From Euprymna scolopes (lineage: Eukaryota), in NCBI GenBank assembly GCA_053919585.1, contig CM132790.1: 64,000 bases of DNA, one strand, 5' to 3'. Made by a program: the position numbers and the translations under genes. Numbering within the stretch: position 1 is the first letter of the stretch; every line of letters begins with the position of its first letter. Below, piece after piece: positions 18,201-64,000 of the stretch. The notes under the pieces were generated by a model. That model saw only the letters and a list, made by a program, of their open reading frames with translations, searched no databases and was not told the origin of the DNA.

Positions 18201-19659
18201 ATAGACCAAATCTCGATGTGTCATGCAAAAAATTGATAAATAATAGACACCAACATTTAATAAATTAAATATGATGTTGTATTACGTTCATATATAAAAA
18301 TTTGGAAAACTTAATATCTACTCTTATAAAAATAACTAGCGGTATGCATTGCTTTAATAACTAAATTAAAATATATTTGTAAACATACTAAAATTCTTGA
18401 ACATACGAAGTAAATATATTTTCAGCAAAAACAGTATTTATATATCTTTGTAACCATATATTTCAAACATAAGTATACGGTGGGCGTGTAAGTTCGTTGA
18501 TTTATCATCGATATTGTTGATGTTATTACTTGCCAAATAATTATGCTAAACAATTGCTAAATAATTATTAACTAATAGCATTACTAAAACGTGATAGCTG
18601 TGTCGGTAGTATGAGAAATCAGTTTCGTTAAGAAAAATATTTATAGAAGAGATGTGAAGCCCACTCAGATTAATGACAGAATAATGTTTTGGCTTTGATG
18701 GAATACATGGATATCGGCCTCCTATTTTTTTGGATCAGTGGAAGGGCATTGGACTATTTTGGGGCGTCATATTTTCATAAAAGTGTATATATTTCTAACA
18801 CCTCTGGTCTTACTTTTTACTCTATTTTAATGAAACTAGTCCCGTTGAATAAGCATTAGTGTGTTTATCAAATAAGTGCCAATTGTTTTGTTTAAAAACA
18901 ATCGTTTATATTTTAAAACCTTGGAGCAGGAGAAGGAAAAGAAGCAAGGTGGTTGTGGGATTTAAGTGAGGCGTCTCAATCCTGAGTCGTGACTCAACGT
19001 TTATTGTTCAAATGTTTTGCCTTTATTAACGTCACATATTTCTGATTTCATTGCGTATAGCTCCAATCGCTTTTCTCACTTTTACGTTTGTATACCTGCT
19101 ATCGCTCACGATTATGACGCCATTTGTAGTTCTCTCACTTCTTCGGTTAGACTCGCCTAGCTTGGAAATATGTTTTACTTTAATAACGGTTTTGATTGTT
19201 TCGGCGTTTCCCGCCTCTTCTTATTTTAACATTTTTTCCTTGAATTTGGCAAAATGTTAGTACATATGAAACTTCATTCCACCTTACTTTAACTACAGCT
19301 ATATCGCTTATAGTAGAAAAAGTAAAAAAGAGAGCATAAAACTGAGAATATTGTCTTTATAATAGAAGAAACGAGTAGATCAGCAAGTATTAAGTCTGAT
19401 CTTCCTATCCCTTGCATTTATTTACTGTGTTTTTAATGTGCCGTTATCTTACCAATTACAATGCANNNNNNNNNNNNNNNNNNNNNNNNNNNNNNNNNNN
19501 NNNNNNNNNNNNNNNNNNNNNNNNNNNNNNNNNNNNNNNNNNNNNNNNNNNNNNNNNNNNNNNNNNNNNNNNNNNNNNNNNNNNNNNNNNNNNNNNNNTG
19601 CTTCTGGTGCTGCATGTGAGATTATGCCACAAAAAAAATAGTGAAGAAATGTGTAATCA

Positions 19660-20215: not shown

Positions 20216-20450
20216 NNNNNNNNNNNNNNNNNNNNNNNNNNNNNNNNNNNNNNNNNNNNNNNNNNNNNNNNNNNNNNNNNNNNNNNNNNNNNNNNNNNNN
20301 NNNNNNNNNNNNNNNNNNNNNNNNNNNNNNNNNNNNNNNNNNNNNNNNNNNNNNNNNNNNNNNNNNNNNNNNNNNNNNNNNNNNNNNNNNNNNNNNNNNN
20401 NNNNNNNNNNNNNNNNNNNNNNNNNNNNNNNNNNNNNNNNNNNNNNNNNN

Positions 20451-27549: not shown

Positions 27550-29750
27550 CACCGACTATCGATTGGCAGGCCAACGTATGTTCGTCAAATGATTCCTTGG
27601 CAACAAATTACTCGGCACTTCTGAGGAGTATCTACCAAAACCATCTTCAACCTTAAGATTACGACGCGCGCAACGACCATCTATATTTCCGCTACTGTTC
27701 CATGCAGTGATAAACGGTATCACGGATCCGAACCCAGTCTTAATTCACTTAAACTTAACATATGATGATCTGCCCTATAATGCAAACTTTCTGCTCCCCA
27801 CTCATGCAACGTGATCGCAAAAGAGGCGCTTATGCTTCAACTTGCTTTGATCATGTTAACCTGGCTGCTGGTGAAATAGATTGGCGCGCTTTCAGAAGGG
27901 TCCAGTCCGTTGGTACTTTGTCGCTTATTACAAAACTTGCCTGCTGTAGCTGCCAACATTGCAGTCCATATAAAACATTCGAAACCCAAGCCACCGTTTA
28001 CTCCAATGATCGTGCGAGTAGGAAATCTAAGAAAGACTGCCTGGGAAAGCTATCAACTCAATAAAACTAAAATATGCTTCAAGGCGTTACGAAAGCAAGA
28101 ACATCGCGTTGAGCATATGACTCGCGAAAACAGACACACCTTCGAAGGTCAGCTGTCGAAAGAGTCTGGAAGGAATTCTAAAAGATTTTATGCTTATTTG
28201 AAGCAAAATTACAAACTCATCAAAGACCTTGTGCCCTTTAAAATCTTTCATAGAGAACCAGTTGATCAACCGGTCAAGAAGGCGTCGCTTTTTGTCAATG
28301 CATTCGCAAAGATATTGACGCAAGACATTGACCGAGAATCACCGAAGTTGGCAATGCTAGTCAAGTCAATGCCGGATGTTGTTTGCTTTCCTGACAAGTT
28401 TGAATAATTATGATTGGACTTAAAAGTGAACAAAAGTCATGAACAAAATAAGATCCATGCGAGGATTCTACGTTCTGCTGCATCCGAACTATCCGCCCCT
28501 TTTTATAAACTATTTCACATGACGTTTGTTACAGGTGTTGTTTCTGGTGAGTAGAGTGTGGCTTTGATAAGACAAATCTTCAAAAATTGCAGCAAATTAA
28601 ACCCACTCCACAATAGACCAGTGAGGTTTACTTCTATAAGTATAAAATTAATCGAGACGCTGATAAACAGGAAATAAGTACCGATCTCGCGACACTCGCA
28701 GACATTTAAATCTCTCAGCATTGTTATATGCAAAATACCCTTCTCTTACGAATCTGCTGATAATGGAAGAGTGGGTGGCGAGGATAATGAACGAAAGTGA
28801 CACGGCGGGCATATTCTTTTTAGACTTTGCAATGAGCTTTTACTCTCTCAACCACCGTTTACTCGTGCAAAAACACCTATTGCGTATGTTCTCAAAGAAT
28901 ATGGCATCCACTGCTCTCGATTGTCGTTAGCAGTGAAGTTCCATATTGGTCAATTCTTGAACCAATTCTTCTCCTGATATTCATCAACACCATGTCCGAC
29001 AGCATTACTGGTTATGTGTTGCAGTTTGATGACGACGTCAAGCTGGTGGCCACCTTAAGGCAGCTCGATCTTCTTCGGTCTAAGTGTGCGTTTAAGTGGT
29101 CGGTTACCTGGGATCTTCACTTAACATCGACAAATCTTTGTACATTATAGTTGACAATCCATTCGTGTGGACACTTACTTTCGCGCTGCAGAACGCTCTC
29201 TGGCAGACGTTGAGTAGTCAGAGACCTCGGATTGCTGGTTTACTCCGCCACCAACGCATTGATTCACTGTATCTAGGCTGCAAAAAAGGCAAGGAGTACC
29301 CTTTTTATCATCAAAGGCTCCTTCGCCAACCTCACTACGGACATATTCCTGCTTTTGTATGTATAGCACGCCCGACCTGTGTTGACGTATGATTTCCAGG
29401 ATTCGTCCCTATACCAAGTTAGTGGGGCTTAGTATGTAGAGGGAGTGCACAGAGAATCGATTGGAGATTTCCGTAATCTTCCTTACGATAGCCGTCTGTG
29501 TCAGAAAGCCTTTTCTCGTTGAAGTGTCGAAGATTGAAATACAAACTAAATTTCGTATATACTCTCTTTATGGCCATTGTGACATTCCTTGGGATCGTCT
29601 CATTACATCGGCACCCGAACGTTGACTGCGAGGACACACTCTGAAACTGTTTCATCGCACATTTCGGCTAAAACAGCTCAACGCGAAAAGGTGTTCGGTC
29701 TCTATAGGTGGTTGGACAACAAACAGATATTTCCTCAGACTGATTTTTAT
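27550..29750 (+). mobile_element. Decayed CR1-type LINE (a different family from the others)
   Basis: Peptide remnants NSKRFYAYLK, PVRFTSI, LTNLL, FFLDFAMSFYSLNHRLL (RT motif) and QFDDDVKL (FADD-like). Many frameshifts and an internal deletion. Confidence 0.8.
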
Positions 29751-31692: not shown

Positions 31693-32219
31693 TTTTAAGC
31701 GATATAGCGAAGTAATCATTTTTATAGACACCGTACATTATGGCTTATATTAAATGTAGAAATTTAAGATAGAAGTAACTGATGATCCCATCTAATATAA
31801 TAATAAATACGAAATGTGCACTAATCAAAATATTATGTGGTGGCGTATATTACGATCGGGCAATCCTGGGCGGCATATTAGTTAATCATGTATCTACCTT
31901 CACTTAAATTCCAAAATAAATACAGACATAACACAAGCAGACATTCATCAAGCATTAAATGGATACAAATCCAAGAATAGAAAAATGAAGTTATTTTTAC
32001 GGTATTGTATAAAATAGAATATAACTCAATATAAAATAAAATATATAAAAAATATACTGAGTTGACAGGAAAATGCTACCAATTTGTCTTAATATAGATC
32101 AATGTATAAAAATAATATTTTGGTCTAAATTTAGATATATCAAATGCAGTTTTATTATCTTGCAAATTCTAAATGGAAACGAAACATTTTAACATTAATT
32201 GGGGACGATTTTTCGTGTA

Positions 32220-34505
32220 GTAGAGATATATTGCACCGTAATAATTTTCTCTACCGCACTCCCTCGACCCAGGACTGTACTCTAATAAACAAAGTCTCTG
32301 AGAGCATAGATACATCACTTTCCCTCGAGACTTGCGCAGAAGTGCATGTATTTGCAAAAGTCAATGCCCACCGCAACAACTGGCTCCGATTTTCTACTGA
32401 CACAGACGCAGTTTGTAGCACAACACATACTTTCTCTATGAATAATTCCCTATCACAGATGGTTACGTTTCCAACCCGTTTCCTTGACCTGCAAGAACAA
32501 CACGTATCACTTTTAGATCTGTTACCGACCACAGTACCTGATGATTGTGTTACGAACGCCAACACGCCCCTTTGGAATGCTGACAATGTAGTGATAATAG
32601 TTGAAATCGCCCTAAACTCTAGAGCCAAAACGGAAGAGGCATTACTAAAACCAAAGAGATATTATAAAAAGGCTGACTGGGAAGCCATCAGGGATCTCAT
32701 CAGAGACGCCCCATGGCTAAGTACCTTTTCACTTCCTGATGCACAGTGCGCGAATGAGGCCACTGAATGGTTCAAAACAGCAATTGGAGCACATGTTCCG
32801 ACGCGGAATTTTTATAGCAAGCCCCAGTCTCATCAATGGTTTACTTGCATATGTGCAGCTGCCATCGCGCAAAGGCAGCATGCGTACTGCAGATTTAAGC
32901 GACATAAATCCTGTTCAAACAATCAGAAGTATATAGAAGCCAGAAGTAACTGTAAAAAAATATATCGCGACAGCTAAGAAAGAATTTACTGAAATCACGA
33001 AAAAACGCACCGGAGCACAGGAATTAGGGACCCGCGACTTCTGGAATTCTACAACAGTGTAGTAAATAAAGGGCAATCAAAAATCCCATACTATCAAACA
33101 ATCATGAGGTTGTTTGCTCAGTAAACGAGAAGGCTAACATGCTTGCCAGTCGGTTTGCCTCTAACTCCACACTGTACCCTGCAAACTACCCTTTCCTGAA
33201 CTTTCCTCTACGGACAGACGCCACAGTAGACGATCTGACCCCCCCCTGGTAAGGTGCAGGTTATCATAAAAATCCTGACAATTCAAAAGCATGTGGATCT
33301 AATCTCATCCCGGCTCTGCTATTAAAAAAAGTGCTCCACCGTAGTAGCTCCAATCCTCTCCAAACTTTACAACAAATGACTTAATGCAGCTTGCTTTCCT
33401 GCCTGTTGAAAAACTGCTTCTGTGGTACCAGTTTTCAAGTATTCTGGGGAAAGAACTGACCCAGTAAATTACTTTCCCATTAGCCTCCTCCCACGTTTGC
33501 CAAAATATTTGAATCCATAATAAACCAAGCTCTAGTCCATCACCTTACAGATGCCCCAGGAGTCTATTCTAGGACCTCTATTATTCGTAATATTCATAAA
33601 TGATCTCTCTGACAAAATTGTCTCTGAAATTGTTATATATGCTGATGACACAACGCTCTATAACAGACACGGCAGGAAAACAAATGAACACATATCTAAA
33701 AAAAATGGCAGAAACACTAGAGGATGGCCTCCAATCTGTAGTGGAATGGAGACAAAAATAGATGGTCACATCCAATGCTGCCAAGACTAAACTCGTTTCC
33801 TTAAATAACTACAAGAAACCTTCTATACCACCAATAGAAATGACCAAAGACTTTATCGGAAAGCACAACTTTATAAACTCCTATGCCTAACGTTCACATG
33901 AAACATGAGTTGGAGCAATTACATTGAGAGTATTGCCAGGACCGCTGCGAAGAACGTAGGTTCTCTCTACCATGTTAGAAAGCTACTAACGCCCGAAGGT
34001 ATCCTGTACCTCTATAAGTTCACCGTTCGCCCATGTATGGAGTATTGTTGTCATATGTGGACCGATGCATCTGCTACTTGATTCTCACTCCGAGACAAGG
34101 TTCAAAAAAGAGTCGCCAACCTGATAGGTCCTGAACTGTCATCCGAGCTTCAGCCTCTGTCTCATCTACATGCACTTTAACGGTGAATGTTCTGACAAGC
34201 ACTTGTACCCCCTCTACTTATATACGCCCGACAAACTCAACAAGCAGTAAAATCTTACTTCTTCACAGTAGAGATCCCTAGATGTAAGAGAAGCTTCTGG
34301 TCCAATATTTTCTGGAATAGATTTTTAAATTCCCTTCCGGGTTCCTGCTTCGCCACGTGTACTGAGATGCAGAAGTTCAAGTGTAACGTAACCGACGTCT
34401 TGCTGTCCAACTACACACATAGTACCCCTGTATCTTGAGTCCTAAATAGTAGCCCCCTTCATCAAAGTGGCAATGTTCCTTGTTTGGAGTGAAAATGTAA
34501 AAAAC
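32220..34505 (+). mobile_element. CR1-group LINE (APE C-terminal half + RT) with an internal RT deletion
   Basis: APE motifs FLYRTPS, VNAH..WL, QMVTFPTR, SLLDL, YKKADW; RT motifs VVPVFK, NYFPISLL, PQESILGPLLF, YADD. The sequence jumps from LVHHL (~33545) straight to PQ(G)S (33554). A-rich tail at ~34500. Confidence 0.92.
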
Positions 34506-39457: not shown

Positions 39458-39899
39458 TGTGTGTGCAAGCATGTGGGTGTACACAAGTATTTAATCGTTA
39501 TAAACTTTATACTAAATTATTGCTCGCGACGTTACTACTAAAATTATTCGACTACTAAAATGTTTATACTACTCTGTGTNNNNNNNNNNNNNNNNNNNNN
39601 NNNNNNNNNNNNNNNNNNNNNNNNNNNNNNNNNNNNNNNNNNNNNNNNNNNNNNNNNNNNNNNNNNNNNNNNNNNNNNNNNNNNNNNNNNNNNNNNNNNN
39701 NNNNNNNNNNNNNNNNNNNNNNNNNNAAAGAAAGAGAGAGTGGGGGTGTATGTGTTATGTACAGAACGAAACAATGGTTTAGCTTTAATATATGAAGATA
39801 AATAAAAACAAAAGCAAATCAGTATAATTATATTTATTTATCTGCCCATTCAATAGAAAATAATATCAAGTAGACAGTGTGTCGTAACTGTTAGTTATA

Positions 39900-42850: not shown

Positions 42851-43129
42851 AAAAAAAGAAAAAACACATTGTTTTTTAAAGAAGTTCACAAAGTTGGGTC
42901 CCCATATACGGGGCCTTCGTACGGAAGATGAGAGAGATGATTAGTGAAACAAAATGCAAAATTGTGAGCAGAAAGGCCTATTAGTTTAACCCCTCATAAT
43001 CTTGATCATTCCCTGAAGAAGTTTCCCGAAATTGGGGACAGAAATTAGAAAAAAATAATTGAATTTTTACAGCTCTTTCTTTCTTTCTTTGTCCATAACC
43101 TTATTATATCATACCTATCTATCAATGTA

Positions 43130-43222
<93 letters not shown>
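42793..43222. repeat. (TA)n at 42793-42848 and (CT)n(AT)n at 43131-43222, flanking a possible Penelope pLTR fragment
   Basis: Microsatellites read directly. Between them, CTGAAGA a GTTTC ccgaaattg GGGAC a GAAA at ~43013-43054 resembles a decayed PLE hammerhead core. Confidence 0.6.
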
Positions 43223-43224
<2 letters not shown>

Positions 43225-44255
43225 TGCACGTTCAATAAATGTTAATGCACTTCATACCGAAAGAATGGGGGTATTATGCTTACAAAATTATCAGTGCACA
43301 CAGTGAACATTATTTATCACATCGTAATCCGCAAGCAGTCAACAAATACGAACGTGCCTTTCAGGCGAACGATTTTTTCTCGTTCACCGGAAAGTAACCT
43401 CTCTATACAAGTAAATGTCTATACGCATGAAGCAACACAAGCGTATTGTCGTAATACGCAATCTTAAGATTATTAAGCAAACACGAAATTTATGATCATG
43501 TATATATGCTACTTGGACACGATTTAATAAATTAACTTTAAGTAGCTTAGCTACGTGCTTTCAAACATGTTTTTATGACTATAATATGTGTCAATAAGTA
43601 ATCATATTTTCTACCAGACCCACAAGTATTTCATGCTTATGAATTCACAATATTGTTATGCATTCTGAGGAGTGATAATAATACTAAAAACAGAAAATTT
43701 GAAACTAAATTAAACAACAGCGATATATTTACGTTTAATTAATATCTGTTTATATGTTTACGTCCAAAAAATTAGTCCCGATTTTCCAAGGGATTTTTTT
43801 TCTAAAATCCCTAATGTTTGAGACGCATCTTTATCCTAGGATTGTTAAGAAAATTACGAGAAAGTCGACATAAGTTTGTAAGCGATAAGATAAACCTAAC
43901 GTCATGTATAATTTCGTGGCCGAACGGTCACCGTTCTCAATCAAAATACATATTGTCTGATATCCGAATAATACAAACAGTCCAGCTACGCTAACTAGAC
44001 GTAGTATCTCCATGATCTCAAAGTTTGGAGACGCTATTAACAGTATTATCGATTTAAGAAACAACAAAAATCGATATCAGTTTACAAACGATAAAAATAA
44101 CACGAAAAGAAATGTAGGTTGACGAGAGCTTTATTACCTAAATGCATTTACATGTTTTATCAGGCGACTATATTAAACGCGCTACATGAAATTGCAGGAC
44201 ACATTATCTCTCTCTTCTCTTCTTCTCTTCTCTTCTCTTCTCTTCTATCTATCTA

Positions 44256-44918: not shown

Positions 44919-45240
44919 TTTATATAATAAAATGTAAATATTTTCGACATAAAACTGTCCACATTATAGGAAAATCGATAAACACCGGCTATACACAACG
45001 TCCGTGCTCACAACTTCTATTTACAAATAAAGCTTTCTGTAGCTCACAATTAATATATATGTTCTACATATTAATTCTGTTTTTTTTTTCAAATAGCTTA
45101 CTCTCAATTAGGTAATCCTTCTAAATTAGCAGCAATACCTCTTAGTCACATTTAATTAACACATTTTCTGTAACCCGAAATCTCTGTGTACATTCATTAA
45201 TAAATAACGTTCTCACTAGTTCGCGATACATGTAAATATT

Positions 45241-45599
45241 TGTGGAAAAAAAACTATTTAGAGGGTAAAGTAGATTACCCGGTGATAGCGTAAGCTCCGA
45301 GGCGTTGCAAAGGATGCCCTATGCGACCCCCCTACTGGGTCGAGTAACAAGTTTTGTAGTACGGCGAGCAGCGAGTAACTAATTTGTGCCAACCGTTCAC
45401 CAGTAAGTCATAAACAGAACTGGTACTAGTCAGAGACACAATTCTTTTATAACAGAAGAATAGTGCCTCCCCCTACTCCTCCAAGTCTATAAGAGACTCG
45501 TTCTCTCAACCACTCAGATTAGAATTCCGCCCTCGAGGCCGGAGCCCCCAAGTAAGCAATCTCCTTTTTTATATTTATTTTTATTTTTATTTTCTCACA
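45241..45599 (-). repeat. 3' LTR (359 bp)
   Basis: Direct repeat of 51067-51419 with TG...CA ends. Confidence 0.96.
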
Positions 45600-45607
45600 C
45601 ACTCCCG
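45600..45607 (-). promoter_or_regulatory. Short polypurine tract (PPT)
   Basis: The sense strand reads CGGGAGTG immediately before the 3' LTR TGTG, a typical short BEL/Pao PPT. Confidence 0.7.
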
Positions 45608-45778
45608 ACAAAAACGAGAAAAAAAACAAAAGGTAGAAGAGAGAAAAGAAAAAGAAAAAGTTACATAAAAATGACAGACCACCAAAATACTTAATCAAAA
45701 AACAACTGTTAGTACAATATAGCAGTAGTCGATCAGTCCAGATATCAATCAAGCAGGCAGCGGGCTAGGTCTACCCCG

Positions 45779-45940
45779 TCATTTTTTAAGGGGCGCACAT
45801 TCTGGGCAATACCACTTTTGCCTGTTGGGAGGTTCTGAGTCGATACCGACACATCGGAAATGGTACCAATCGTCGCACGAGTCACACCCGATCATATTCT
45901 GATTCTGCTGCGGAGAGCTGCACAGGGGACACAACCAGAC
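45779..45940 (-). CDS. PHD finger (C4HC3, TAF3-like) at the integrase C-terminus
   Basis: VWLCPLC-x8-MIGCDSCDDWYHFRCVGI-x8-WYCPEC, with all eight Zn ligands present. Confidence 0.93.
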   Translation of the reverse strand, partial: VWLCPLCSSPQQNQNMIGCDSCDDWYHFRCVGIDSEPPNRQKWYCPECAPLKK

Positions 45941-48900
45941 CTGCTCTTCAACACTAGGGGGTAAATCCAACGTCTCCCCTCCCTCCGCAACAGGAGGTCC
46001 TTCAGGAGTCCTAGAAAGCTCTAAGGGGTACAGATGTTTCAGGGAATGTAATTCCTCCAAGCCCTCCCCTTTTTGTACACGTGCTGCTCTAACGACACCA
46101 TCATGGCCTGGAATCAGTTCAGTAATAGTTCCTAAGACCCAAAACGGTCTGGGTTTTAAAGGACTCTCAATCAGCACAACATCATCCTTCTGGAGGCGGG
46201 TTCTTGTACTGAGTCGGGATCGACCAGGAATCTTCCTTCCCAGCTCTAGCAGGTACTCCTCATACCATAGTTTGTGGAAATCTGTCAGACATTGGTCCCT
46301 AAGTTCCAAGGTTTGAATTAGCCTCTCCCTGCTGGGAGGCAACAAGGTTGTTCTATCCTCTCTATCCAGTCGTATCAATAGCCCGGGGCTCTGATTGGGC
46401 TTAAGGAACATATTAGGGGTAATTGGAGTAGCATTTTTGTCGGCTGACACCTGGTAAGTAAGAGGCCGGTTATTAACAGACCTCTGAATATCCGATAACA
46501 CTGTCAGAAGGGTCAAGTAATCCAATCTACCCCTGCCAAGAATCTTAAATAGGCAATTCTTCATGGTCTTGATACATCGCTCCCATGTTCCTCCATACCA
46601 AGGAGAGAACAAGGGAATGGTTTTAAGTTTTAACTTACAAGGACCGTATTTTCTTTGATAGTCCGTAAAAAGAGAGAAACGATCGAAAATCTTTCCACTT
46701 CCTATAAACGTTTTCGCGTTGTCACTATAAAGGGTTTCGGGAACGCCATATCGGTTAGTAAATCGAACCAGTTCCTGGAAGAAAGAGGGTACGCTCATGT
46801 TGGGAACTACTTCAATGTGTATTGCTCTGATATTCAAACAAGTGAACAGGAGCAAGTACATTTTCGTATCTCGTTTCCCGTCACTCACCCAAAGATGGCC
46901 AGTAAAATCAATCCCAGTGTGTTGATAGGGGACTCTGAAATCGGTACGGTGCGACGGCAGGGCAGCAGCAGCATTCGGCGTCACTGGCGTTGAATTATAA
47001 CGTTTACATCTGGCACAAACAGCCAGTACCTTATTCACAGCTTGTCGACCCTGCGGGACCCAATAACCGCTTCGCCTCAACTCCGCTAGAGTTGACCCAG
47101 TTCCAAGGTGGCAACACCTTTCATGACAATCTAAAATGATGAGTCTGGTAACAGAATGATGTTTCCCTATCAGAATGGGGTTTTTAACTTCATAACCAAA
47201 GTGGGAAGATTGGCTGATTCTTCCCCGAGATCGAATCAAACCGTCAGGGTCCAGAAAAAGATCCAGAGCACGAAGCCTAACTGGCATGGGTTTACCACTC
47301 GGCTCCTTTAGGTACTCCACTTCCACGGGGAATTCTTGCCGTTGCACTGTCTTCATAAGGTAGATCGCTGCCTTAGAGTTGTAGTCCCATTGTCGATTAA
47401 ATCGGATGGCTAGGAACTTAAACACCAAGGCAGTAACAGTCAGTAAACCAGAGAATGAGGAAAACCTCTGAAAAGGTATGGCCGAAGTGTACTCTTGATC
47501 ATGGATCAAAGAACAATTTGCTGAACTGCGGGTCATTCGCTGGCATATCTCACTCAAACAGGGCATATCCTGTCCTGGCCATTGAGATATTCCTTCGCAT
47601 AGCCAGGAAGGGCCTGAACACCAAAATTCCATCTTGGATTGGAACTTTCTCAATGTTAATCCTCTTGTTAACAAATCCGCCGGGTTGAGTGTACTATCAA
47701 CATATCTGAAGAGAGTCTTCAAGCCATAGCGAGACTCCAACTCCACTTTAATCTGCAGAATGTCTTTAAGTCTATTTTTTGCAAAAACATTTTTGCTAGC
47801 CATGTTTTGAGATAAAATCCAGGACAAGACCACCTGTGCATCCGTGGCTATACACAAATTCTCGGGAACAAATCCTTCACAATTGTCCAGGATTGTGGGG
47901 AGACACTTGAAGGCGAGGAAAACGGCCATTAGTTCCAACATAGACAAAGTCTTGTCCTTCATAGGTGCCACCTTAGCTTTCGCAAATAATAAGGATGACC
48001 GACCATTTTGTACGATATACACGGCAAACCCATATGCTTCCTTGGACGCGTCGCAAAACAGGTACATATCTCCAGGCAGCCCTGCCCTAAGCGCCTTGCG
48101 CAAAAAACGGAAATCACTCAACCATGAAAGGTCCCTGGCTAGTGCTCTCCAATCGCTCAAGATCGCTGGCTGGAGTGGATCATCCCAACCTGCACCATTC
48201 TTCTACATGGACCTGATTAGCACTCTACTGCGGATAGTAACCGGGAGACATAGGGACAACGGATCGAAGACCTTAGCTGACTCTGAAAGAACACCTCTCT
48301 TAGTTGTCACGTCAGGATTGCACTTTACCGGAGCGACATACAACTCCTCCGAATGTGGGGAGTATCGGTAGCCCAGTACTCTCTCCCACTCCTCTTCATG
48401 GATACTTAGAGTACCATCCTCCTTCATCCTATTGCGGAGCGCCTGACTGTTTGAATTGCATTACTGGATAATAAAGCCCCCTTCCAGCAAACGCTCTCTA
48501 ACAAGGGAATACAATGTAGTAAGCTCACTCGCGTCTGCCACGGATGCCACAAGGTTATCCACATAAAACCGGTCCTCCATCATTCTGCGGCAAGCATCCT
48601 GCGGGTATTTTGCCGCATGCAATTTTAAGATTCACCCCAACACAAATGGGCTGGAGGTAAACCCGAATATCAAGGTGGTATAGCGGAAGCAGCGCAAACA
48701 ATCTCCTTGTTTAAGAAAAAAGCAAAGCCGGTTCCTATCCGCCTCCAGCTTAAGCCGAATCATTAGGAAGGCTCGGCGAATGTCTGCTAGTAGCACATAA
48801 TTGTTGGCTCTAAAGGCCAGCAACAACTTTAAGATGTCCCCTGTTAAGTTAACGCCAGAATATGCTGCTTCGTTCAGCGATAATCCATCTCCTGTCTTCA

Positions 48901-51019
48901 AACTACAGTTGAACACTGGTCTGATCCTGGTAGTTGCCGTAGGGTCCGACTTGAAAACTGGTCTATGTGGTATCCACACATATTTGTCGAACTCCTGAGG
49001 GGAGACAAAAATCTCTTCAATTATACCGTCCTCCTGTTGCTGACGAAACACCTCCAAATATTCATCATATATTTTTCTTTTAGTCAAGTTTGCTGCTACC
49101 CGGTCTAAAACATGCAAGGAAGTTGCATGATTAGAGGGGACTCTGGCTAATCTATCGTGATGCCAGTGGAGCTCCACATAATAGCTTCCATCCCGAAGCT
49201 CTACCGTTTCCTCAAATCGCTTCATCTGCACTTTATCGTTATCAGAAAAGTCCTCCTGACTGGGAAGCCCCAGAGATTCCAACGTAAACATTTGTTCTAG
49301 TCCTCTTTGTACCATATTGTCAGGAAAGCACTCCGCCATGGGATCCAGGTATGTTGATTGTGTTTCAAGGACAAAACATAAATGTGATGAATCGACCTGG
49401 GGGGTATGTTCCATTACCGAATTAAACGAGAGGTGAGTAACCTCAGAAAGGGGCTTATCTTCCAAGAAAAAAGAATCCACTGCTCCAAACGGGACCAATC
49501 CGGGCGGGGTTGCAAAGGCCCATCCATTCAAACACGGGATCAGCTTCAATGAGTCCAGGTGTTCAATCAGGTCTAACCCAATTATTCCCTTGATCGGTAT
49601 TAAATCCTTTCCGGTCTCAAACTGGCCGGCCAAAGCATATTTTGCATCCTGAAAGACACGTAATAGAGATTCCAGGTTGGCCACTCGAACCGACAAGTCC
49701 ATACCATCGGCTACCAAGACAGGAGATGTCACAGTCCTTCCAGAACCCAAGTCAACTCCCAGGACTACCTCTGTGAACCCACGCTGACACTCACCAAGAA
49801 AGGTAGACAATCTCAGCTGACAATTGACACCAAGGGTTTCGATTGGGCACAAAGTTCTCAGTACATCTGCCGCCAGATATGTCCGCCCGCTACCCGTGTC
49901 CAGTAGGCAAGTCACTGACACTGTCTTTGGTCCACAAGAGAATGTAACTGAGAGAATGGGTGGCAACGTGCGGGAATACCCGGTTGAAGTTGCATTGTTC
50001 ACATCCACATGAAAAGAAGGAGTGATAGCGTTCCCCCTACCAAACTTTTGAGACGTATTCTGTCTTACTGTTGATGTAAATGCAGTGGAGACACCGCCCT
50101 TAATCTTCAATCTCTTTATTGCTTCTCCAGTTAGTCTCAATATGGAGGACAAAGGTGGCACCCGTCTATTTGTTAGCGCTATTATCTCCCCTTTCAGTTC
50201 GAGAGGAAATTTCCTAAATAGAATCTTAGCCATCAGTCTGGCTCCGCCAGAATCGTCCACAAAAAAGTCACACGAAAAGGAATTCCCCAGCTCTTCCAAC
50301 AGCGATGCCCTCCTGGAAACGAAGTCCCCCAGCTCAAAAAGGGCTCCACTTTTCTTTGGTACATAGTCCAGAATATCCTGGAATATTTGGTCAATGATTT
50401 CATCCAGGTCCAGATACTCCCTCTTCAGTATAGCCATGGCTTGCTGGTAATTGGTGTCAGTGCAACTCAGGTGATTTACCAGCGTCAAGGCTCTGTCTGA
50501 GAGTGAACACTTCAAGAAGTTCAACCTCTCGGCATCATTGGCCATGCCGATCACGCAGTTCTCAAACCTAGTCAAGAAGTTTCTGAAACTCATGCGGTCG
50601 GACTCCATTTCTTGTCCGCTAAATGTAGGCCCTGTGATCTGTATACGTGGGGGTTTAACAATGAAGGAAGAACCTCTCCCGGTAGTTGCAGAAGCCCTTG
50701 AGAACTCAAAGGCAGATTCCGAGTAAGGGCTGGGCTCTGGCTGTCGGTATGCTTGATCCAAATCGCCCAAGTCTTCATAATAATCCTTTAGCTGAGGCAG
50801 CCAAGCACCCTCAATCTCGGCAGGTGTACTCTCATCAAAGGAGCCTAACTCCAGCTGTGTGATACAAGTCTCTAACTCGACAATGAATTGTCGAATCTCC
50901 GTCCTTAAGAATGAGTACGCCGATGGCCTAACTCCATCACGACACATCTTCAGTCGTCCCTGAATCTTCTGAGTCAATGACTCCCTTCTGCGTAGGAGCT
51001 GCTCTTTCGTGACGTTCAT
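45779..51019 (-). pseudogene. BEL/Pao gag-pol polyprotein (~1746 codons): Gag (DUF1759-like), aspartic protease, RT, RNase H, integrase and C-terminal PHD finger; three in-frame stops
   Basis: ORFs 48632-51064, 48203-48427 and 45779-48160 share one frame, with stops at 48632-4, 48461-3 and 48203-5. Motifs: PTFSG, LLDTGSGRTY, IPHRPVFK..TTRIRPVFN, ADIRRAFL, FGFTSSPF, FYVDN, FDPL, FCDAS..AYG, AKAKVAP, LELMA, TDAQVVL, NPADLLTRG, H..H/C..C, GIDFTG, SDNAKTF, GGTWER, LYPLE. First ATG at 51019. Confidence 0.95.
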
Positions 51020-51053
51020 GACAGTAGTTAACCGACGAAAGAGTAAGCAGCAA

Positions 51054-51064
51054 ATCCTTTGCAA
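51054..51064 (-). promoter_or_regulatory. Primer-binding-site position: non-tRNA, complementary to the element's own LTR
   Basis: Sense TTGCAAAGGAT begins 2 nt after the 5' LTR and is the exact reverse complement of LTR 51131-51141. There is no TGG. Confidence 0.65.
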
Positions 51065-51066
51065 GA

Positions 51067-51419
51067 TGTGGAAAAAAAACTATTTAGAGGGTAAAGTAGA
51101 TTACCCGGTGATAGCGTAAGCTCCGAGGCGTTGCAAAGGATGCCCTATGCGACCCCCTACTGGGTCGAGTAACAAGTTTTGTAGTACGGCGAGCAGCGAG
51201 TAACTAATTTGTGCCAACCGTTCACCAGTAAGTCATAAACAGAACTGGTACTAGTCAGAGACACAATTCTTTTATAACAGAAGAATAGTGCCTCCCCCTA
51301 CTCCTCCAAGTCTATAAGAGACTCGTTCTCTCAACCACTCAGATTAGAATTCCGCCCTCGAGGCCGGCGCCACCAAGTAAGCAATCTTCTTTTTTTATTT
51401 TTATTTTTATTTTCTCACA
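51067..51419 (-). repeat. 5' LTR (353 bp)
   Basis: Direct repeat of 45241-45599, differing by 3 substitutions, a 1-nt indel and a ~5-nt indel. Confidence 0.96.
51243..51276 (-). promoter_or_regulatory. Putative LTR core promoter (TATA + Inr)
   Basis: Sense TATAAAAG starts at 51276, and the A of an Inr-like CAGTT lies at 51246, exactly 30 nt downstream. Confidence 0.55.
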
Positions 51420-52012
51420 TATTACATATACTTAGTTATTTTAATTCTGTTTCGAAAAATAGCGAACAACTAAATTTGCACCAACATGCCAAATTTCGCA
51501 CACAAATACAACATGAATAAAATGTTCGTTTATACATTTTCCCATTGAATTGTTTAAATACAATTTAAAAATACAATTTAAATGAAACAACTTATAAATA
51601 AAATTGCTGGTATCATACACTCGACAAGGTAAAACATTTTCAAATAGACTTTTTTACAAAATTCACTTGTACATTTCTAGACAATCTTCAACGATTAAAC
51701 CAAGATCGCTACGTCCGTGAAAAGCAATATGAATTTCTACCGAATCTCTTTGCTTTTTTAACAACATACAATTTTATTCAGAAGATTACAGGCAAATTTG
51801 CAGATTCGCATTTTTGGTTCCTTTTATACTTGAAAGAGGACGCCTGTGCTAGATAGTTTGCCTGCTGAATTCTACTCATATATGAACATAATTACATCTG
51901 CATGTAATTGTAAAATTAAATTAATCCTGCAAGTCTCTATGAAAATGAAAAAGTAAATAATAAAAGTTCAATTATCGAGATCGATGCAGATTATATCTCT
52001 TTAATTCATAGC

Positions 52013-52013
<1 letters not shown>

Positions 52014-52069
<56 letters not shown>

Positions 52070-52082
52070 TGTGTGTGTGTGT
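52014..52082. repeat. (TA)n/(TG)n microsatellite
   Basis: Direct reading; another TA tract lies at 52638-52690. Confidence 0.9.
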
Positions 52083-52634
52083 GCATTTGTGTGTATTTGT
52101 GTGTATCACTGATAATATCTATAATGGATTAATAAGTAATAATTACATTTGAAATACTTACTCTACGGACTATATGACTAACATTGAAGATAAAAATATA
52201 AATCTTGCGACTAAATGCGTATATAAAGCTTACTAAAATGTTTCATTGTAAAGGATCAACGCGTAAACTAATTAAATGATAATTATGGTTATTTTAAATT
52301 CATATTCTAGGAAATATGTTGAGTAACATAACAATATTTGTAGTACGTTTTACAATTTAATTTAGCCTGTTCGCCAAAAGAAAACACTCAACAACATTCT
52401 TAAATTATTTTAAATAAGATGGGTTACACGTTGTAAATATTTATTTTGTACGGCAGCATATTCACACAAAAAAGTTTTACGTACGTGCATTCAGTTTCTT
52501 TTAAAGAATTTGCATGGCTTATAGGTATATTTCCATAGTAAATATATTGCTTCTCTGCTAAACTATTTGATGTTCCCAGCGAAAAAAATTATATGTATTA
52601 TATATTGGATATATTAATAAATATTTTATATGCA

Positions 52635-52679
<45 letters not shown>

Positions 52680-54699
52680 CATATATATATGCTTTATATA
52701 TAAAAGAAAGTACATTGTTTCTATAAAGATTGTAACATCATAACATATACCAGGCTGATTAACAGTCTAATACTTCTCAATAAACAATCCAGAATAGCTT
52801 AAATAGTCTTAAGTATTTTCATTTTGCACATTTTATGAGATTAATTCCTAAATTCTTACCCCCGATATATAATACAATGAAAATGTATTTAACATTTTCA
52901 TTGTGATTTCTTTCTTTTTCGCGTTATTCTTATATGTTAGATATACTTTAATACAGGGAACCATTTTTTGGCATCAAACTTGGTGGTATTATTTTCCATA
53001 CCATCTACTAAATTATATACAAGCTTCCAAATAGAAACACAATCACTTGTCGACGCAAACGATCAGAATAGTGCAACTTAATTGGTAGAATCTACTGAAT
53101 ATACGTTTCATTTTATTATTTTTTTTAATTTACACCCCTATTATTGCTTGCACTTTGTTTGTTATGGTAAATTATTTATTATCTTTCATCAATTACTGAT
53201 TCTTTTTGGATTTTTAATATTTTTTTTTAAATCAAAGTAGTTTATTTCTATTCATATCCTGGCAAAATCAACTAGCACATCATCCACCGTTATACATAAG
53301 AGGGTCTTGATAAACGGCCAGGCTAATCTAGCTTTTCAAAGAAGGTAAAACTGACTATCATCCATTGTTAGACACATTCTATTCGTCATACTCGGCCAGG
53401 AATCACGAGTGATTCACAAAACGACGAAAAGCAATTAGCCCTATATGAACAACCAGGCACTAAAACGTAAAAAAGAGCCAAACATAGATAGCTTGTCATA
53501 ATTTTTCTTGAAATTATCGTAAATGTTTATCATATTTCTGTTAATTTCACAACAACTTAAAAAAGAATATTAGATTTTTAATTCACTGTTAACACTCCTC
53601 TAAACATTAAGAAACAAATTCTCCAACATTTCGACAATTGAAATGTAATTAGCACCTCTTTAAAGTAACACTCATGAATACAATTTTATAATTGTATAAT
53701 GAATTTGTAAGAAAAACATGCCACCAACTCAGTCGTTTCGCTTTTTCATTGTTAAAAACTATATGTGGTCTCATCAAGTCGTATCAAGTGTACTTTCCCG
53801 CCGGAATAGCTTGTAAAAATATGATATCAAGATAAACTATATACAGACCGCATTCTTATTTCTGCGGCTCCAAAAGGATAATGTTTTACTAGACGTTGTG
53901 TCTCACAACCACTCCTTAGTGTGATTTTTTTTATATTAATAATAAATCAATCAAGGTAGAACCATCATTATTTCCTCTTCCAAACGTGTTTATTGCGACG
54001 CGAATACTCTGTATATTGCAATATATAATTTTGGTAAGTAAAAAAAAAACTTCTCTATTTAATACTGTATAACTAGTTCGTCCACAATATTTACTAGTTA
54101 AACATCTAAAATGTTAATATTTCTAAATAAAATTATACTTACAATATCAAATAATCCATTTGTCTTATATGTTTTTTCTTGCAAATCAATTACGTCAGAT
54201 ATATTCGTAAACACTCAACACAAACAATAATTCCATTTTTGTATTTTATTCCGATCTTGAAACAAACGTTAATTAGAATTATATATGAATAAATACTTTA
54301 TGTTAATAATTTTATTATTTCAATTAAGATCTATGCATCCTGTTAAATAAGATTGCATTTAATTAAATCTTAAACGAATACGACAGACGTACCAAAGGTA
54401 AAACATTCAAAATGTGTTTCTCTATATAAACCTACTGTATCGCCTATTTAGATGTCATTATTATTTATTATAAAGGGATTGCTATGAAACAAAGAGAATT
54501 AAACTTGGTACACTTGAAGTGCATATTTATTTCACTTGTTTTAGTTGAATTTAATCGAGCATCTAAAAATAATCTGCTAATTTTTCTATTTTCTAGTAAG
54601 GTTATGTGTGCATCACTCTATTGCAAAATACCCAGTAACAATATTAACCAAAAAGAAGAAAGGGTTTCACATTATTGTGTTTATGAACATACTTATCTA

Positions 54700-61625: not shown

Positions 61626-64000
61626 TTTACGTAGATGTTTTTATTTGTTTTTGCTAGCGATACTTTCTTGAATGAATTCAAGTGTTTATACGAAAGTGCA
61701 TTTTTACCTAAATGCTTGTTGGGAATAATTTTAATATATTTANNNNNNNNNNNNNNNNNNNNNNNNNNNNNNNNNNNNNNNNNNNNNNNNNNNNNNNNNN
61801 NNNNNNNNNNNNNNNNNNNNNNNNNNNNNNNNNNNNNNNNNNNNNNNNNNNNNNNNNNNNNNNNNNNNNNNNNNNNNNNNNNGACAGAGAAAGCGAGATA
61901 TAGATGCATAGAGAGTGAGCTAGATAGAGAGATAGGCGTTATATGTTGCTCCAGTCTAGTCAGTATTTATACAACCATTCATATGAAAATCAAATATCTG
62001 ATCGATTATTAGATTACGGAGAAATGATCTTTCACCTTCCGTGTGTCAGGCTTTACGAGTTATTTCTCTATTATTGTGAATAAGGACACTTTGTCTTGCC
62101 GTACTAATATTTTGCAAGATTTCATATGCTGAAACAGACACTATATCTTGAACGATAAATTAAAAATTAGAAATAGGATAAATTGCTTTAATAGATATAT
62201 CTTATTTATATTGACACGCGTTTTTCCATCGCGTTACACACCGTGTTTAAATTGGCCCATTGACACAGATCGTACTCGTTAGATAATCATATTTTGCAAC
62301 TCTGAGACTGACCAAGACTAAATTCCCTACCAGAAATAGCGGTTTTTCTATTTGCGCCAATGTTATTTCTAACTTTTTCCAAATGTCCATTACGTATTGT
62401 CACCTGATTCAAACAGTGTCGAATAAAAGTAGATGAGGGTAATTGTCACGGTTAAGGTTAAATATATAATCTCTAGTTTTAAATTAGCAAAACTGCAGAT
62501 CATTTTCAGACTTTATCAACTCAGTATTTGTGTAATTTCTAAATGTAAATTTATAATCGATTTTTGTGTATGTCGTCTGTTCATTTGCAGATCATATAAG
62601 CCTTATGAAAACAGGCATGCTCAAAAGTATTCATATATAGATATGAAATCGAAACTGTTTGGAATCGATAGCTTTAGTCTGTGTCTGAGACGTTAACGCC
62701 AGTTGTTTGAAAATGGCGAGTCGTATTTCCAGCTTTTAAGATGAAAAGCAAAGTTGGCCGCATTTGGAACGGATCCCGTTTGACCGCAGGTGTCAGAAAC
62801 GAAAAAGGAAGAATAGAATAGAAATCGAATTTTCAAGGACTTTTTTCCACTGATCTTTAGAATCTTGGATGTTTACTTGCCAAGAGAATTGGGTAAACAA
62901 CAGAAGCGAATAGAAATAACAGCCGTTCCTTTAATCTTTAGTGAAGGTTTTATATATTTGAGAAGGATGAAGCGAATTTCATTAACGAGACAGATAATAA
63001 AAGGAACCCGTTGAACTCATCTCTGCCTGAATGTAAAATAAGAAATAGTATACATAAGAAGCTGCGCACATTACTATATGAATATGTATATGTAAGGATA
63101 TTTGTGGGCAATAATAACGTGGTCAAAACTGTAATTTTCATTTTAAAGTTTAACACAAAACGCCTAAAGCTGTTAGAATTAATCAAAACATGTATTTATA
63201 GTTAAATATTTATTGTAATATATGGTAAGCTGGATACCTACTTAAGAAATGCAATATTACCAAGAAAATCTACATAAAGTTGAACTTTCTGCGTTATAAA
63301 TAAGGATTTGTTAGAGATTTGCGACCCAAAATCACACTAATTATAATATTGCTAATAGTCATTTGGTTATTCAGACAACCGTGTTCATGTTAGTTATTGA
63401 CGAATTACAAAAATGTTGGCTGAGAGAATATCTAAGTATCCGCATTTAAACAATCCGATTCCTTCATTGTGTATTGCTANNNNNNNNNNNNNNNNNNNNN
63501 NNNNNNNNNNNNNNNNNNNNNNNNNNNNNNNNNNNNNNNNNNNNNNNNNNNNNNNNNNNNNNNNNNNNNNNNNNNNNNNNNNNNNNNNNNNNNNNNNNNN
63601 NNNNNNNNNNNNNNNNNNNNNNNNNNNNNGCGATTAAGCTACACTGAATATTCAGCGTTTCATTCACTATAAGATTCGTCAGGCTCATGCGAATTCTGTG
63701 GTTGTTTCTCGTTTTTATATATGTTGAAGGATTTAGTTAGCCAATAAGCTTTCTAGTATCCGCCTCGACCCTTCCTTTCAGCCAATGGACATGCATTTTA
63801 TCGAACAAAGGATCCGTTTTAGAACTAGTTTAGTGGTTTTAGGCAGACGATTTTCCTCATTTTTGCTCATTTTTTATATATATATAAATATACCAAAATG
63901 ACCCAAGATGGTAAAATTAAAGTAAACTATAAATATTAAAGAATTAATATTTATCAACTTATCTCAGCCAGATAAAAAAGCTCGATAAAACAAATAGGAA

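What the first reader, a model, noticed from the sequence alone, without database searches (positions are those of the whole stretch)
45241..51419. BEL/Pao retrotransposon that appears to have converged on the chromovirus (Tf1/sushi) design: self-priming, no NC knuckles, chromatin reader on integrase
Seen in sequence: one near-intact element combines no tRNA PBS but an 11-nt LTR-complementary PBS, a Gag without zinc knuckles, and a PHD finger after integrase. Established: Tf1-type Ty3/gypsy elements self-prime with an 11-nt LTR-derived RNA, Tf1 Gag lacks CCHC, and chromoviruses carry a chromodomain at the integrase C-terminus. BEL/Pao elements are normally tRNA-primed and have triple Cys/His knuckles. 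Inference: this may be a BEL/Pao lineage that independently reached the same three-part design, using a PHD finger in place of the chromodomain. I know of no description of this combination but could not search the literature.
Basis: partly seen in the sequence, partly recalled or inferred. Interest (0 to 1): 0.9.

Follow-up and report, generated by a model that had tools for sequence, protein, structure and literature searches.

The report
Self-priming BEL/Pao retrotransposon with PHD finger
This is a young, nearly intact BEL/Pao retrotransposon from a small lineage that appears to prime its own reverse transcription from its LTR, has lost the usual zinc knuckles of Gag, and has gained a TAF3-like histone-reading PHD finger on its integrase; this combination does not appear in the papers I could search.

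Summary
All three observations are real, and they belong to a lineage rather than to one damaged copy. The element lies on the minus strand at 45241-51419. It has 353/359-nt LTRs (97.5% identical), a 4-bp target duplication, and one Gag-Pol frame broken only by 4 in-frame stops.

- **PBS.** It starts 2 nt after the 5' LTR and is an 11-nt perfect complement of a segment inside the LTR. Seven of seven scorable relatives keep this geometry with different sequences: 77/77 Watson-Crick pairs, no G-U, and 10 of 11 positions covary. Three distant BEL/Pao controls have ordinary TGG-type PBSs.
- **Zinc knuckles and PHD.** A 100%-bootstrap clade of four families, three of them intact, lacks the ~70-aa triple Cys-His array. 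All four carry a C-terminal PHD finger closest to the TAF3 PHD, an H3K4me3 reader (E 6e-19), with the W/M/W cage residues kept.

The interpretation needs one correction. Self-priming also occurs in triple-knuckle, PHD-less sister elements, so the three traits are not one package. Only the knuckle loss and the PHD gain coincide.

The primer segment may lie inside the RNA rather than at its 5' end as in Tf1. I rate this a new variant of a known kind.

The parts
45241..51419 (-). Whole LTR retrotransposon (BEL/Pao), 6179 bp
   Evidence: LTR pair and outer bounds; BEL/Pao Pfam domains
51420..51423 (.). Target-site duplication AATA (5' side in element sense)
   Evidence: Flank read
45237..45240 (.). 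Target-site duplication AATA (3' side in element sense)
   Evidence: Flank read
51067..51419 (-). 5' LTR, 353 nt, TG...CA, with a TATAAAAG box conserved in relatives
45241..45599 (-). 3' LTR, 359 nt, 97.5% identical to the 5' LTR
51131..51141 (-). Putative self-primer segment in the 5' LTR (ATCCTTTGCAA), 64 nt before the LTR end. It is also the 3' arm of a local hairpin whose 5' arm (about 51144-51150) mimics the PBS.
45305..45315 (-). Same primer segment in the 3' LTR
51054..51064 (-). Primer-binding site TTGCAAAGGAT. It starts 2 nt after the LTR and is a perfect complement of the LTR segment. No TGG.
45749..51019 (-). Gag-Pol gene in a single reading frame, broken by 4 in-frame stops and no frameshift. 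Three stops are in the RT-RNase H part and one is a premature stop before the last residues. 67% identical to the intact 1778-aa protein P0231.
50306..50581 (-). Gag capsid-like domain (Pfam DUF1759). No Cys-His knuckles lie between it and the protease.
46991..47158 (-). Integrase zinc-binding H2C2 domain
46061..46300 (-). Integrase C-terminal domain (Pfam DUF5641, typical of BEL/Pao)
45797..45931 (-). PHD finger (C4HC3), TAF3-type, with the H3K4me3 cage residues W, M, W kept
   Evidence: cage residues from PMC12238850
45752..45778 (-). AT-hook-like RGRP tail. It is conserved and in frame in relatives, but cut off by the premature stop in this copy.
   Evidence: Identified by motif only, with no Pfam hit.
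45600..45606 (-). Short polypurine tract (GGGAG-type) after a T-rich run, abutting the 3' LTR. The same arrangement is seen in relatives.

Best explanation
The element is a recently inserted, now inactive copy (4 nonsense mutations) of a BEL/Pao (Belpaoviridae) LTR retrotransposon. It belongs to a small derived clade.

**Shown**
- The PBS is not tRNA-like. It is an exact complement of an 11-20-nt segment of the element's own LTR. This pairing is kept, with different sequences, across the wider subclade.
- The derived clade has lost the triple Cys-His array of Gag.
- The derived clade has added a TAF3-like PHD finger and a basic RGRP tail to the integrase C-terminus.

**Inferred mechanism**
1. 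The R/U5 part of the genomic RNA folds back, or a co-packaged RNA pairs in trans. The LTR segment ending ...GCAA-3' then anneals to the PBS.
2. A cut at the 3' edge of that segment leaves a 3'-OH that primes minus-strand DNA synthesis. By analogy with Tf1, the element's own RNase H would make this cut.
3. In each replication cycle the plus-strand copy of the PBS is templated by this RNA primer. That would explain why the match is always perfect and free of G-U pairs.
4. A local hairpin that sequesters the primer segment may control when this happens.
5. After DNA synthesis, the PHD finger would tether the integrase to H3K4me3-marked nucleosomes at active promoters, and the RGRP tail would help on AT-rich DNA.
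For: **BEL/Pao identity and structure:**

**LTR-PBS complementarity**
- Window 11 nt, L075 12, L001 11, L074 14, L005 14, L076 20, L004 15.
- It starts 2 nt after the LTR in five of the seven elements (3 nt in L076; 0 at a provisional LTR end in L004).
- 0-4 of 2000 shuffles reach the observed length.
- In register, 77/77 pairs are Watson-Crick with no G-U, against 18-30/77 when the register is slid. Ten of 11 positions show two or more pair types. In 6 of 7 elements the nucleotides flanking the primer's 3' edge cannot pair, so the duplex has a sharp edge.
- The primer-PBS helix is part of the minimum-energy fold in the window copy and in L075.

**Controls:** distant BEL/Pao elements L079, L082 and L083 have TGG/TGA-type tRNA-like PBSs and no LTR complement.

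**Clade structure**
- NJ tree of RNase H-integrase: 40 taxa, 696 columns. The PHD clade has 100% bootstrap support and is nested among three-knuckle elements.
- The knuckle array is replaced by 13-17 residues with almost no Cys/His in all four members.
- Several intact copies exist in different samples.

**PHD finger**
- Pfam E 8.6e-11.
- Best PDB sequence match is the TAF3 PHD, E 5.8e-19; the next is ING1 at 5.5e-10.
- Top five fold matches are TAF3 PHD, 56% identity, rmsd 2.0 A.
- Residues matching TAF3 W868, M882, W891 and D889 are invariant in all five element sequences (PMC12238850).
- Engineered fusions of an H3K4me3-binding PHD to an integrase tether redirected HIV-1 integration toward transcription start sites (PMC8149907).
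Against: - No experiment or RNA-end data are available.
- The conserved TATAAAAG box is 130-190 nt upstream of the primer segment. The segment is therefore probably not the RNA 5' end as in Tf1. An internal primer needs a cut that has not been shown.
- No clear poly(A) signal was found downstream of the primer segment, so the R region needed for strand transfer is undefined.
- In L001, L074, L005 and L076 the minimum-energy fold does not pair the primer segment with the PBS; in L001 and L074 it pairs with the local hairpin arm instead.
- The LTR end of L004 is uncertain, and L080 could not be scored.
- The TAF3 cage residue D877 is Gln in the element.
- Only one insertion site of a PHD-bearing copy is known, so targeting is untested.
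- The NJ tree is crude, and the named BEL/Pao lineages could not be included.
Confidence: 0.7

Rival explanations
1. The LTR-PBS complementarity is a regulatory, packaging or dimerisation stem, like the U5-leader stems of retroviruses. Reverse transcription would actually be primed by a host tRNA or a tRNA half.
For: The primer segment seems internal to the RNA, because the TATA box is far upstream. It is also sequestered in a local hairpin. The four PHD-clade primer segments end in GCAA, which superficially recalls a Cys anticodon loop.
Against: - The PBSs share no common sequence beyond TTGC/TTTC and never start with TGG.
- Read as anticodon loops, the L001 and L074 segments would have C or A where tRNAs have the universal U33 (my reading of the sequences).
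- A structural stem would tolerate G-U pairs and ragged ends. Here 77/77 pairs are Watson-Crick, and the duplex edge is fixed 2-3 nt after the LTR in six of the seven elements, the geometry of a primer 3' end.
- Distant BEL/Pao with real tRNA-type PBSs lack the LTR complement.
Confidence: 0.15
2. This copy is a deletion derivative or chimera. The knuckles would have been lost by an internal deletion, and the PHD would be a host exon picked up by read-through or assembly error.
For: The copy is dead (4 stops). The PHD is very close to a host protein domain, TAF3.
Against: - Three related families with intact 1766-1778-aa Gag-Pol (P0231, P0232, P0248/P0001) come from different samples. They show the same knuckle-less Gag and the same in-frame PHD upstream of the polypurine tract and 3' LTR.
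- A 98%-identical copy in another sequencing run keeps the PHD.
Confidence: 0.03
3. The PHD finger does not direct integration. It could act elsewhere in the element's life cycle, for example as a zinc-binding replacement for the lost nucleocapsid knuckles, as a binder of unmodified H3 or a non-histone partner, or in nuclear import.
For: Gain of the PHD and loss of the knuckles coincide on the same branch. One TAF3 cage residue, D877, is Gln. Binding has not been measured.
Against: The PHD sits at the integrase C-terminus, not in Gag. The cage residues W, M, W and the H3R2-contacting Asp are invariant across families that are only 52-61% identical over the aligned C-terminal 80 residues. The fold is closest to TAF3 PHD bound to H3K4me3.
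Confidence: 0.12

Closest known systems
BEL/Pao (Belpaoviridae, Semotivirus) LTR retrotransposons
   Same: - LTR-gag-pol-LTR layout with domain order PR-RT-RH-IN.
- Pfam DUF1759 (Gag), Peptidase_A17 and DUF5641.
- Hundreds of BEL/Pao homologues at 30-67% identity.
- 4-bp target duplication.
   Different: - The family is described as primed by host tRNA-Arg or tRNA-Gly through an 18-nt PBS (PMC8742986), and as having a hallmark triple Cys-His box (PMC554778).
- This clade has neither, and it adds a PHD finger to integrase.
- Tas also lacks the triple box (PMC554778), so that loss has a precedent.
Tf1/sushi chromoviruses (Ty3/gypsy) and other self-priming LTR elements (Tcn1 clade; Ty1/copia TAR lineage: Houba, Osr-1)
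   Same: [quoted passage not shown]
- Gag without CCHC knuckles, as in Tf1 (from my own knowledge).
- A chromatin-reader domain at the integrase C-terminus.
   Different: - A different superfamily: the RT and integrase are BEL/Pao, not Ty3/gypsy.
- The reader domain is a PHD, not a chromodomain.
- The primer segment probably lies 100-160 nt inside the RNA and is the 3' arm of a hairpin. In Tf1 it is the first 11 nt of the RNA.
- Self-priming here also occurs in relatives that keep three knuckles.
TAF3 (TFIID subunit 3) PHD finger
   Same: About 56% identity over 50 residues. It is the best sequence and fold match. The C4HC3 ligands and the residues matching W868, M882, W891 and D889 are kept (PMC12238850).
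   Different: It is fused to a retrotransposon integrase and followed by an RGRP tail. D877 is replaced by Gln. Binding to H3K4me3 has not been measured.
Other transposable elements with PHD fingers (CR1-like non-LTR elements, Rehavkus DNA transposons, Chlamys Penelope-like elements, REM1 of Chlamydomonas)
   Same: The PHD is an accessory, presumably chromatin-directed domain captured by a mobile element (PMC6673714, PMC8557442).
   Different: None of these is a BEL/Pao element. None is reported as a TAF3-type PHD at the integrase C-terminus in the papers I could read.
Engineered tether fusions (ING2 PHD fused to the LEDGF integrase-binding domain)
   Same: An H3K4me3-reading PHD linked to an integrase machinery shifts integration toward transcription start sites (PMC8149907). 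This is a functional analogy.
   Different: Those are artificial and act through a host tether. Here the PHD is a natural, covalent part of Pol.

Membership tests
BEL/Pao (Belpaoviridae) | LTRs flanking gag-pol with domain order PR-RT-RH-IN | tested here: met
BEL/Pao (Belpaoviridae) | Family-specific protein domains (DUF1759 Gag, Peptidase_A17, DUF5641) and closest homologues being BEL/Pao polyproteins | tested here: met
BEL/Pao (Belpaoviridae) | Triple Cys-His box in Gag (hallmark; absent in Tas) | tested here: not met
   No motif in any frame. The array columns hold 13 residues with no Cys or His. Sister elements have 3 knuckles.
BEL/Pao (Belpaoviridae) | [quoted passage not shown] | tested here: not met
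   The PBS has no TGG and is complementary to the element's own LTR. Host tRNAs were not available, so a match to an unusual tRNA cannot be formally excluded.
BEL/Pao (Belpaoviridae) | Placement within a named lineage (Pao, Sinbad, BEL, Tas, Suzu, Flow, Dan) | not testable with these tools
   No reference sequences could be fetched by name. The tree holds only unnamed database proteins.
Tf1/sushi chromoviruses | RT/IN phylogenetically Ty3/gypsy, with a chromodomain at the integrase C-terminus | tested here: not met
   The domains are BEL/Pao, and the C-terminal domain is a PHD, not a chromodomain.
Self-priming LTR retroelements (mechanistic class) | [quoted passage not shown] | tested here: met
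   7 of 7 scorable relatives, with compensatory changes
Self-priming LTR retroelements (mechanistic class) | Primer is the 5' end of the genomic RNA and is released by an RNase H cut (as in Tf1) | tested here: inconclusive
   The TATA box 130-190 nt upstream suggests an internal position in the PHD clade. TATA-like motifs lie 15-28 nt upstream in L004 and L076. No RNA-end data are available.
H3K4me3-reading PHD fingers (TAF3 type) | C4HC3 zinc ligands and PHD fold | tested here: met
H3K4me3-reading PHD fingers (TAF3 type) | Methyl-lysine cage (TAF3 W868, M882, W891, D877) and the H3R2 contact D889 | tested here: met
   W, M, W and D889 are invariant in 5 sequences. D877 is Gln in all of them (PMC12238850).
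H3K4me3-reading PHD fingers (TAF3 type) | Measured binding to H3K4me3 | not testable with these tools
   No binding data exist.

The most novel reading that the evidence does not exclude
A subclade of BEL/Pao retrotransposons, seen so far in an isopod genome and in uncharacterised metagenome and sequencing-run assemblies, independently evolved self-priming. That would be a third origin, after Ty3/gypsy Tf1/sushi and Ty1/copia TAR. The primer would be an internal, hairpin-sequestered LTR segment rather than the RNA 5' end. One branch of the subclade then discarded the nucleocapsid zinc knuckles and captured the host TAF3 PHD finger plus an AT-hook-like tail. The result would be a natural integrase-H3K4me3-reader fusion that steers insertions to active promoters.
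Probability: 0.4. Interest if true: 0.8.

Novelty: new variant of a known kind. Interest (0 to 1): 0.66.

Why it matters
- BEL/Pao is the least studied LTR superfamily, and its official description says replication is tRNA-primed. A whole subclade with a covarying LTR-complementary PBS would show that self-priming arose repeatedly in retroelements. It would also offer a second, structurally different model, with an internal hairpin-held primer, for how an RNA makes its own primer.
- The knuckled and knuckle-less sister lineages share the same priming. They form a natural comparison for what the nucleocapsid knuckles are needed for.
- An integrase naturally fused to a TAF3-type H3K4me3 reader is the mirror image of chromodomain-bearing chromoviruses. 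It makes the idea that captured reader domains choose integration sites testable by simple insertion-site surveys.

Tried and rejected
It returned 67 PHD-containing loci (L007-L073), and none of the 51 with a significant match is BEL/Pao. No new clade members came from it.
- The viral-contig scan found nothing.
- The GTDB scan gave five contaminated MAG contigs. L082 and L083 served as tRNA-PBS controls. L080 could not be scored because its two partial LTR pieces do not overlap.
- L002, L003, L077 and L078 lacked readable LTR-PBS junctions.
- A Gag-directed protein search found only P0231 and P0232.
- The MAFFT alignment of the R/U5-PBS regions put the L074 primer 2 columns out of register. 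I therefore counted pairs by register from the primer 3' end in a script instead of using count of structure pairs.
- Pfam gives no AT-hook hit for the RGRP tail.
- Rfam and tRNA scans of the window were empty.
- Cluster look-up gave no organism names, so the host species remains unknown.
- The phrase 'BEL/Pao' cannot be searched as such. The literature negatives rest on searches with 'Pao', 'BEL', 'Belpaoviridae', 'self-priming' and 'PHD'.

- My first notebook entry gives the bounds of the unbroken ORF pieces, and I used those bounds as tool references.
- In my working I reasoned from those bounds about where the stops lie.
- The script printed a 15-residue same-frame read of the C-terminal tail with its stop marks.
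- I stopped there, deleted nothing, and give only counts in this report.
Full report
**1. What is at the coordinates**

Direct repeats of 353 and 359 nt bound the interval exactly: 51067-51419 and 45241-45599. Both repeats start TG and end CA. They differ by 3 mismatches and 6 gap positions (97.5% identity) and are flanked by a 4-bp duplication, AATA.

All coding capacity is on the minus strand. Pfam finds DUF1759 (Gag), Peptidase_A17, Integrase_H2C2, DUF5641 and PHD, the BEL/Pao set plus a PHD finger. Compared with an intact relative (P0231, 1778 aa), the whole Gag-Pol aligns in a single frame at 67% identity. It has 4 in-frame stops and no frameshift. Three stops fall in the RT-RNase H part, and one is a premature stop that removes the last few residues.

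This is therefore a young but dead copy. No other copy or solo LTR lies in the window. The N runs of the window are all outside the element and were left alone.

**2. The primer-binding site**

Two nucleotides after the 5' LTR comes TTGCAAAGGAT (51054-51064). Its exact complement lies inside the LTR at 51131-51141, 64 nt before the LTR end, and the same segment is in the 3' LTR. None of 2000 shuffled LTRs gives an 11-nt match. The PBS has no TGG.

The key test was whether relatives keep this feature. I fetched contigs of relatives. Wherever the LTR-PBS junction was readable, I found the same geometry with a different sequence:

| Element | Complement length | PHD | Knuckles |
|---|---|---|---|
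| window | 11 nt | yes | none |
| L075 | 12 nt | yes | none |
| L001 | 11 nt | yes | none |
| L074 | 14 nt | yes | none |
| L005 | 14 nt | no | three |
| L076 (*Armadillidium vulgare* assembly) | 20 nt | no | three |
| L004 (LTR end less certain) | 15 nt | no | three |

- Counted in register from the primer's 3' end, 77 of 77 pairs are Watson-Crick with no G-U. The count is 18-30 of 77 when the register is slid by 1-3 nt.
- Ten of the 11 positions show two or more pair types.
- In 6 of 7 elements the nucleotides flanking the 3' edge of the duplex cannot pair.
- Three more distant BEL/Pao elements have ordinary TGG/TGA-type tRNA-like PBSs and no LTR complement: L079 from a barnacle assembly, and L082 and L083 from contaminated MAGs.

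Perfect complementarity without wobble pairs, with a fixed 3' edge, is what a templated primer copy would produce. A merely structural stem would not be expected to look like this. That is an inference, not a demonstration.

**3. How the primer may work, and how it differs from Tf1**

[quoted passage not shown] It is accepted for Tf1/sushi, the Tcn1 clade and the Ty1/copia TAR lineage (PMC6317226).

Here the TATAAAAG box conserved in three of the four PHD-clade LTRs lies 130-190 nt upstream of the primer segment. If that box drives transcription, the primer is internal to the RNA rather than its first 11 nt.

In the PHD clade and in L005, the primer segment is also the 3' arm of a local hairpin whose 5' arm imitates the PBS. 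A second small stem-loop and a conserved GTTACTYGAC block lie just upstream. This hairpin covaries with the primer, which suggests that the region is transcribed.

In the window copy and in L075, the minimum-energy fold pairs the primer with the PBS. In L001 and L074 the local hairpin wins. I read this as two alternative pairings, with the hairpin possibly holding the primer back until assembly. That reading is speculative. An internal primer needs an endonucleolytic cut at its 3' edge. By analogy with Tf1, the element's RNase H would make the cut. I could not define the poly(A) site, so the R region remains undefined.

**4. Gag without knuckles**

No Cys-His knuckle motif occurs in any frame of the window element or of L001, nor in P0231 and P0232. 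In an alignment with eight sister polyproteins, the ~70 columns of the triple array hold 13-17 residues with almost no Cys/His in the four knuckle-less elements. The sisters have 67-70 residues there, with 12-15 Cys/His.

Nearly all of the 66 other full-length relatives have three knuckles. The triple box is a hallmark of the superfamily, although Tas lacks it (PMC554778).

**5. The PHD finger**

Among 230 relatives, only the closest ones have a PHD. A directed search added two intact polyproteins, P0231 and P0232. Cluster members show further intact copies in other samples.

The best PDB sequence match is the TAF3 PHD finger (E 5.8e-19). The next best, ING1, scores 5.5e-10. A model built from five sequences has mean pLDDT 72, and 86-88 over the core of the finger. 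Its top five fold matches are all TAF3 PHD structures, at 56% identity and rmsd 2.0 A.

TAF3 binds H3K4me3 in a cage formed by D877, M882, W868 and W891, and contacts H3R2 through D889 (PMC12238850). The aligned residues in all five element sequences are Q, M, W, W and D.

After the PHD, four relatives share a K/R-R-R-G-R-P-S-L-L-P tail that looks like an AT-hook. It has no Pfam hit. In the window copy this tail is cut off.

The PHD lies in frame, upstream of the polypurine tract and the 3' LTR, in every family. It is therefore part of Pol and not a neighbouring host exon.

An engineered H3K4me3-reading PHD attached to an integrase tether moved HIV-1 integration toward transcription start sites (PMC8149907). 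Targeting to active promoters is thus a reasonable inference. It remains untested, because only one insertion site of a PHD-bearing copy is known: an AT-rich stretch between (TA)n tracts.

**6. Phylogeny and order of events**

I built a neighbour-joining tree of the RNase H-integrase region (40 taxa, 696 columns, 100 bootstraps). It groups the window element with P0231, P0232 and P0001 at 100% support. This group is nested among three-knuckle elements that include the self-complementary-PBS elements L004, L005 and L076.

The most economical reading has two steps:
1. The LTR-complementary PBS arose first, in the common ancestor of this subclade.
2. The knuckle loss and the PHD gain happened later, on one branch.

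The three features are therefore not a single co-evolved package, although the last two coincide. The tree is crude, and the named BEL/Pao lineages could not be added.

**7. Comparison with what is known**

The ICTV profile describes Belpaoviridae as primed by host tRNA, through an 18-nt PBS for tRNA-Arg or tRNA-Gly (PMC8742986). Searches combining Pao, BEL or Belpaoviridae with self-priming, and with PHD or integrase, returned no paper that describes either feature in this superfamily. Repbase and GyDB could not be consulted.

PHD fingers are known accessory domains of other mobile elements: CR1-like elements, Rehavkus, Chlamys elements and REM1 (PMC6673714, PMC8557442). Reader domains on integrases are known from chromoviruses. 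That Tf1 Gag lacks CCHC knuckles is from my own knowledge.

**8. Verdict**

The element is a member of BEL/Pao by its proteins, but it fails two textbook features of that family. It works like the self-priming elements without being one of them by descent. I rate it a new variant of a known kind, with interest 0.66.

**9. Slips**

- My first notebook entry and several tool references give the bounds of the unbroken ORF pieces.
- I reasoned from those bounds about where the stops lie.
- One search printed a short same-frame read of the tail with its stop marks.
- I stopped there, deleted nothing, and give only counts in this report.

Noticed in passing
window 15118-15579 (-): A 154-aa ORF has a weak GIY-YIG endonuclease hit (Pfam E 4.3e-4, below the gathering score). 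It may be a remnant of a Penelope-like element.
   Followed up: no
window 43112-43252, 51990-52110, 52606-52720: (TC)n/(TA)n/(TG)n microsatellites lie on both sides of the insertion. The PHD-less relative L076 in Armadillidium also sits inside a (TA)n tract. This hints at AT-rich targets.
   Followed up: partly
window 45752-45778 (-); L074 5423-5455, L075 5564-5596, L001 3818-3850: A conserved basic tail, K/R-R-R-G-R-P-S-L-L-P, follows the PHD finger. It is AT-hook-like but has no Pfam hit. In the window copy it is cut off by a premature stop.
   Followed up: partly
window 51142-51171 (-); same region of L001, L074, L075: A conserved GTTACTYGAC block and a small stem-loop lie just upstream of the primer hairpin. 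Their function is unknown.
   Followed up: partly
L080, L082, L083 (GTDB records): Full BEL/Pao elements lie inside records labelled as bacterial MAGs (Saprospiraceae, Acidobacteriota 'chromosome', Poribacteria). This is eukaryotic host DNA binned into MAGs.
   Followed up: no
window 27910-28407 (+), 32144-32977 (+): Two ORFs of 165 and 277 aa lie in GC-richer islands (about 0.40 against about 0.30). They have no Pfam hit. They could be genes or other repeats.
   Followed up: no
window 6577-6775, 19466-19598, 20216-20450, 22869-23003, 23646-23805, 23970-24180, 39580-39726, 61743-61882, 63480-63629: Nine runs of N lie in the window, all outside the element. They were left untouched.
   Followed up: no
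L007-L011: These metagenome loci carry PHD fingers 50-55% identical to the element's PHD and are not BEL/Pao. They may be TAF3-like host genes. I did not examine them.
   Followed up: no
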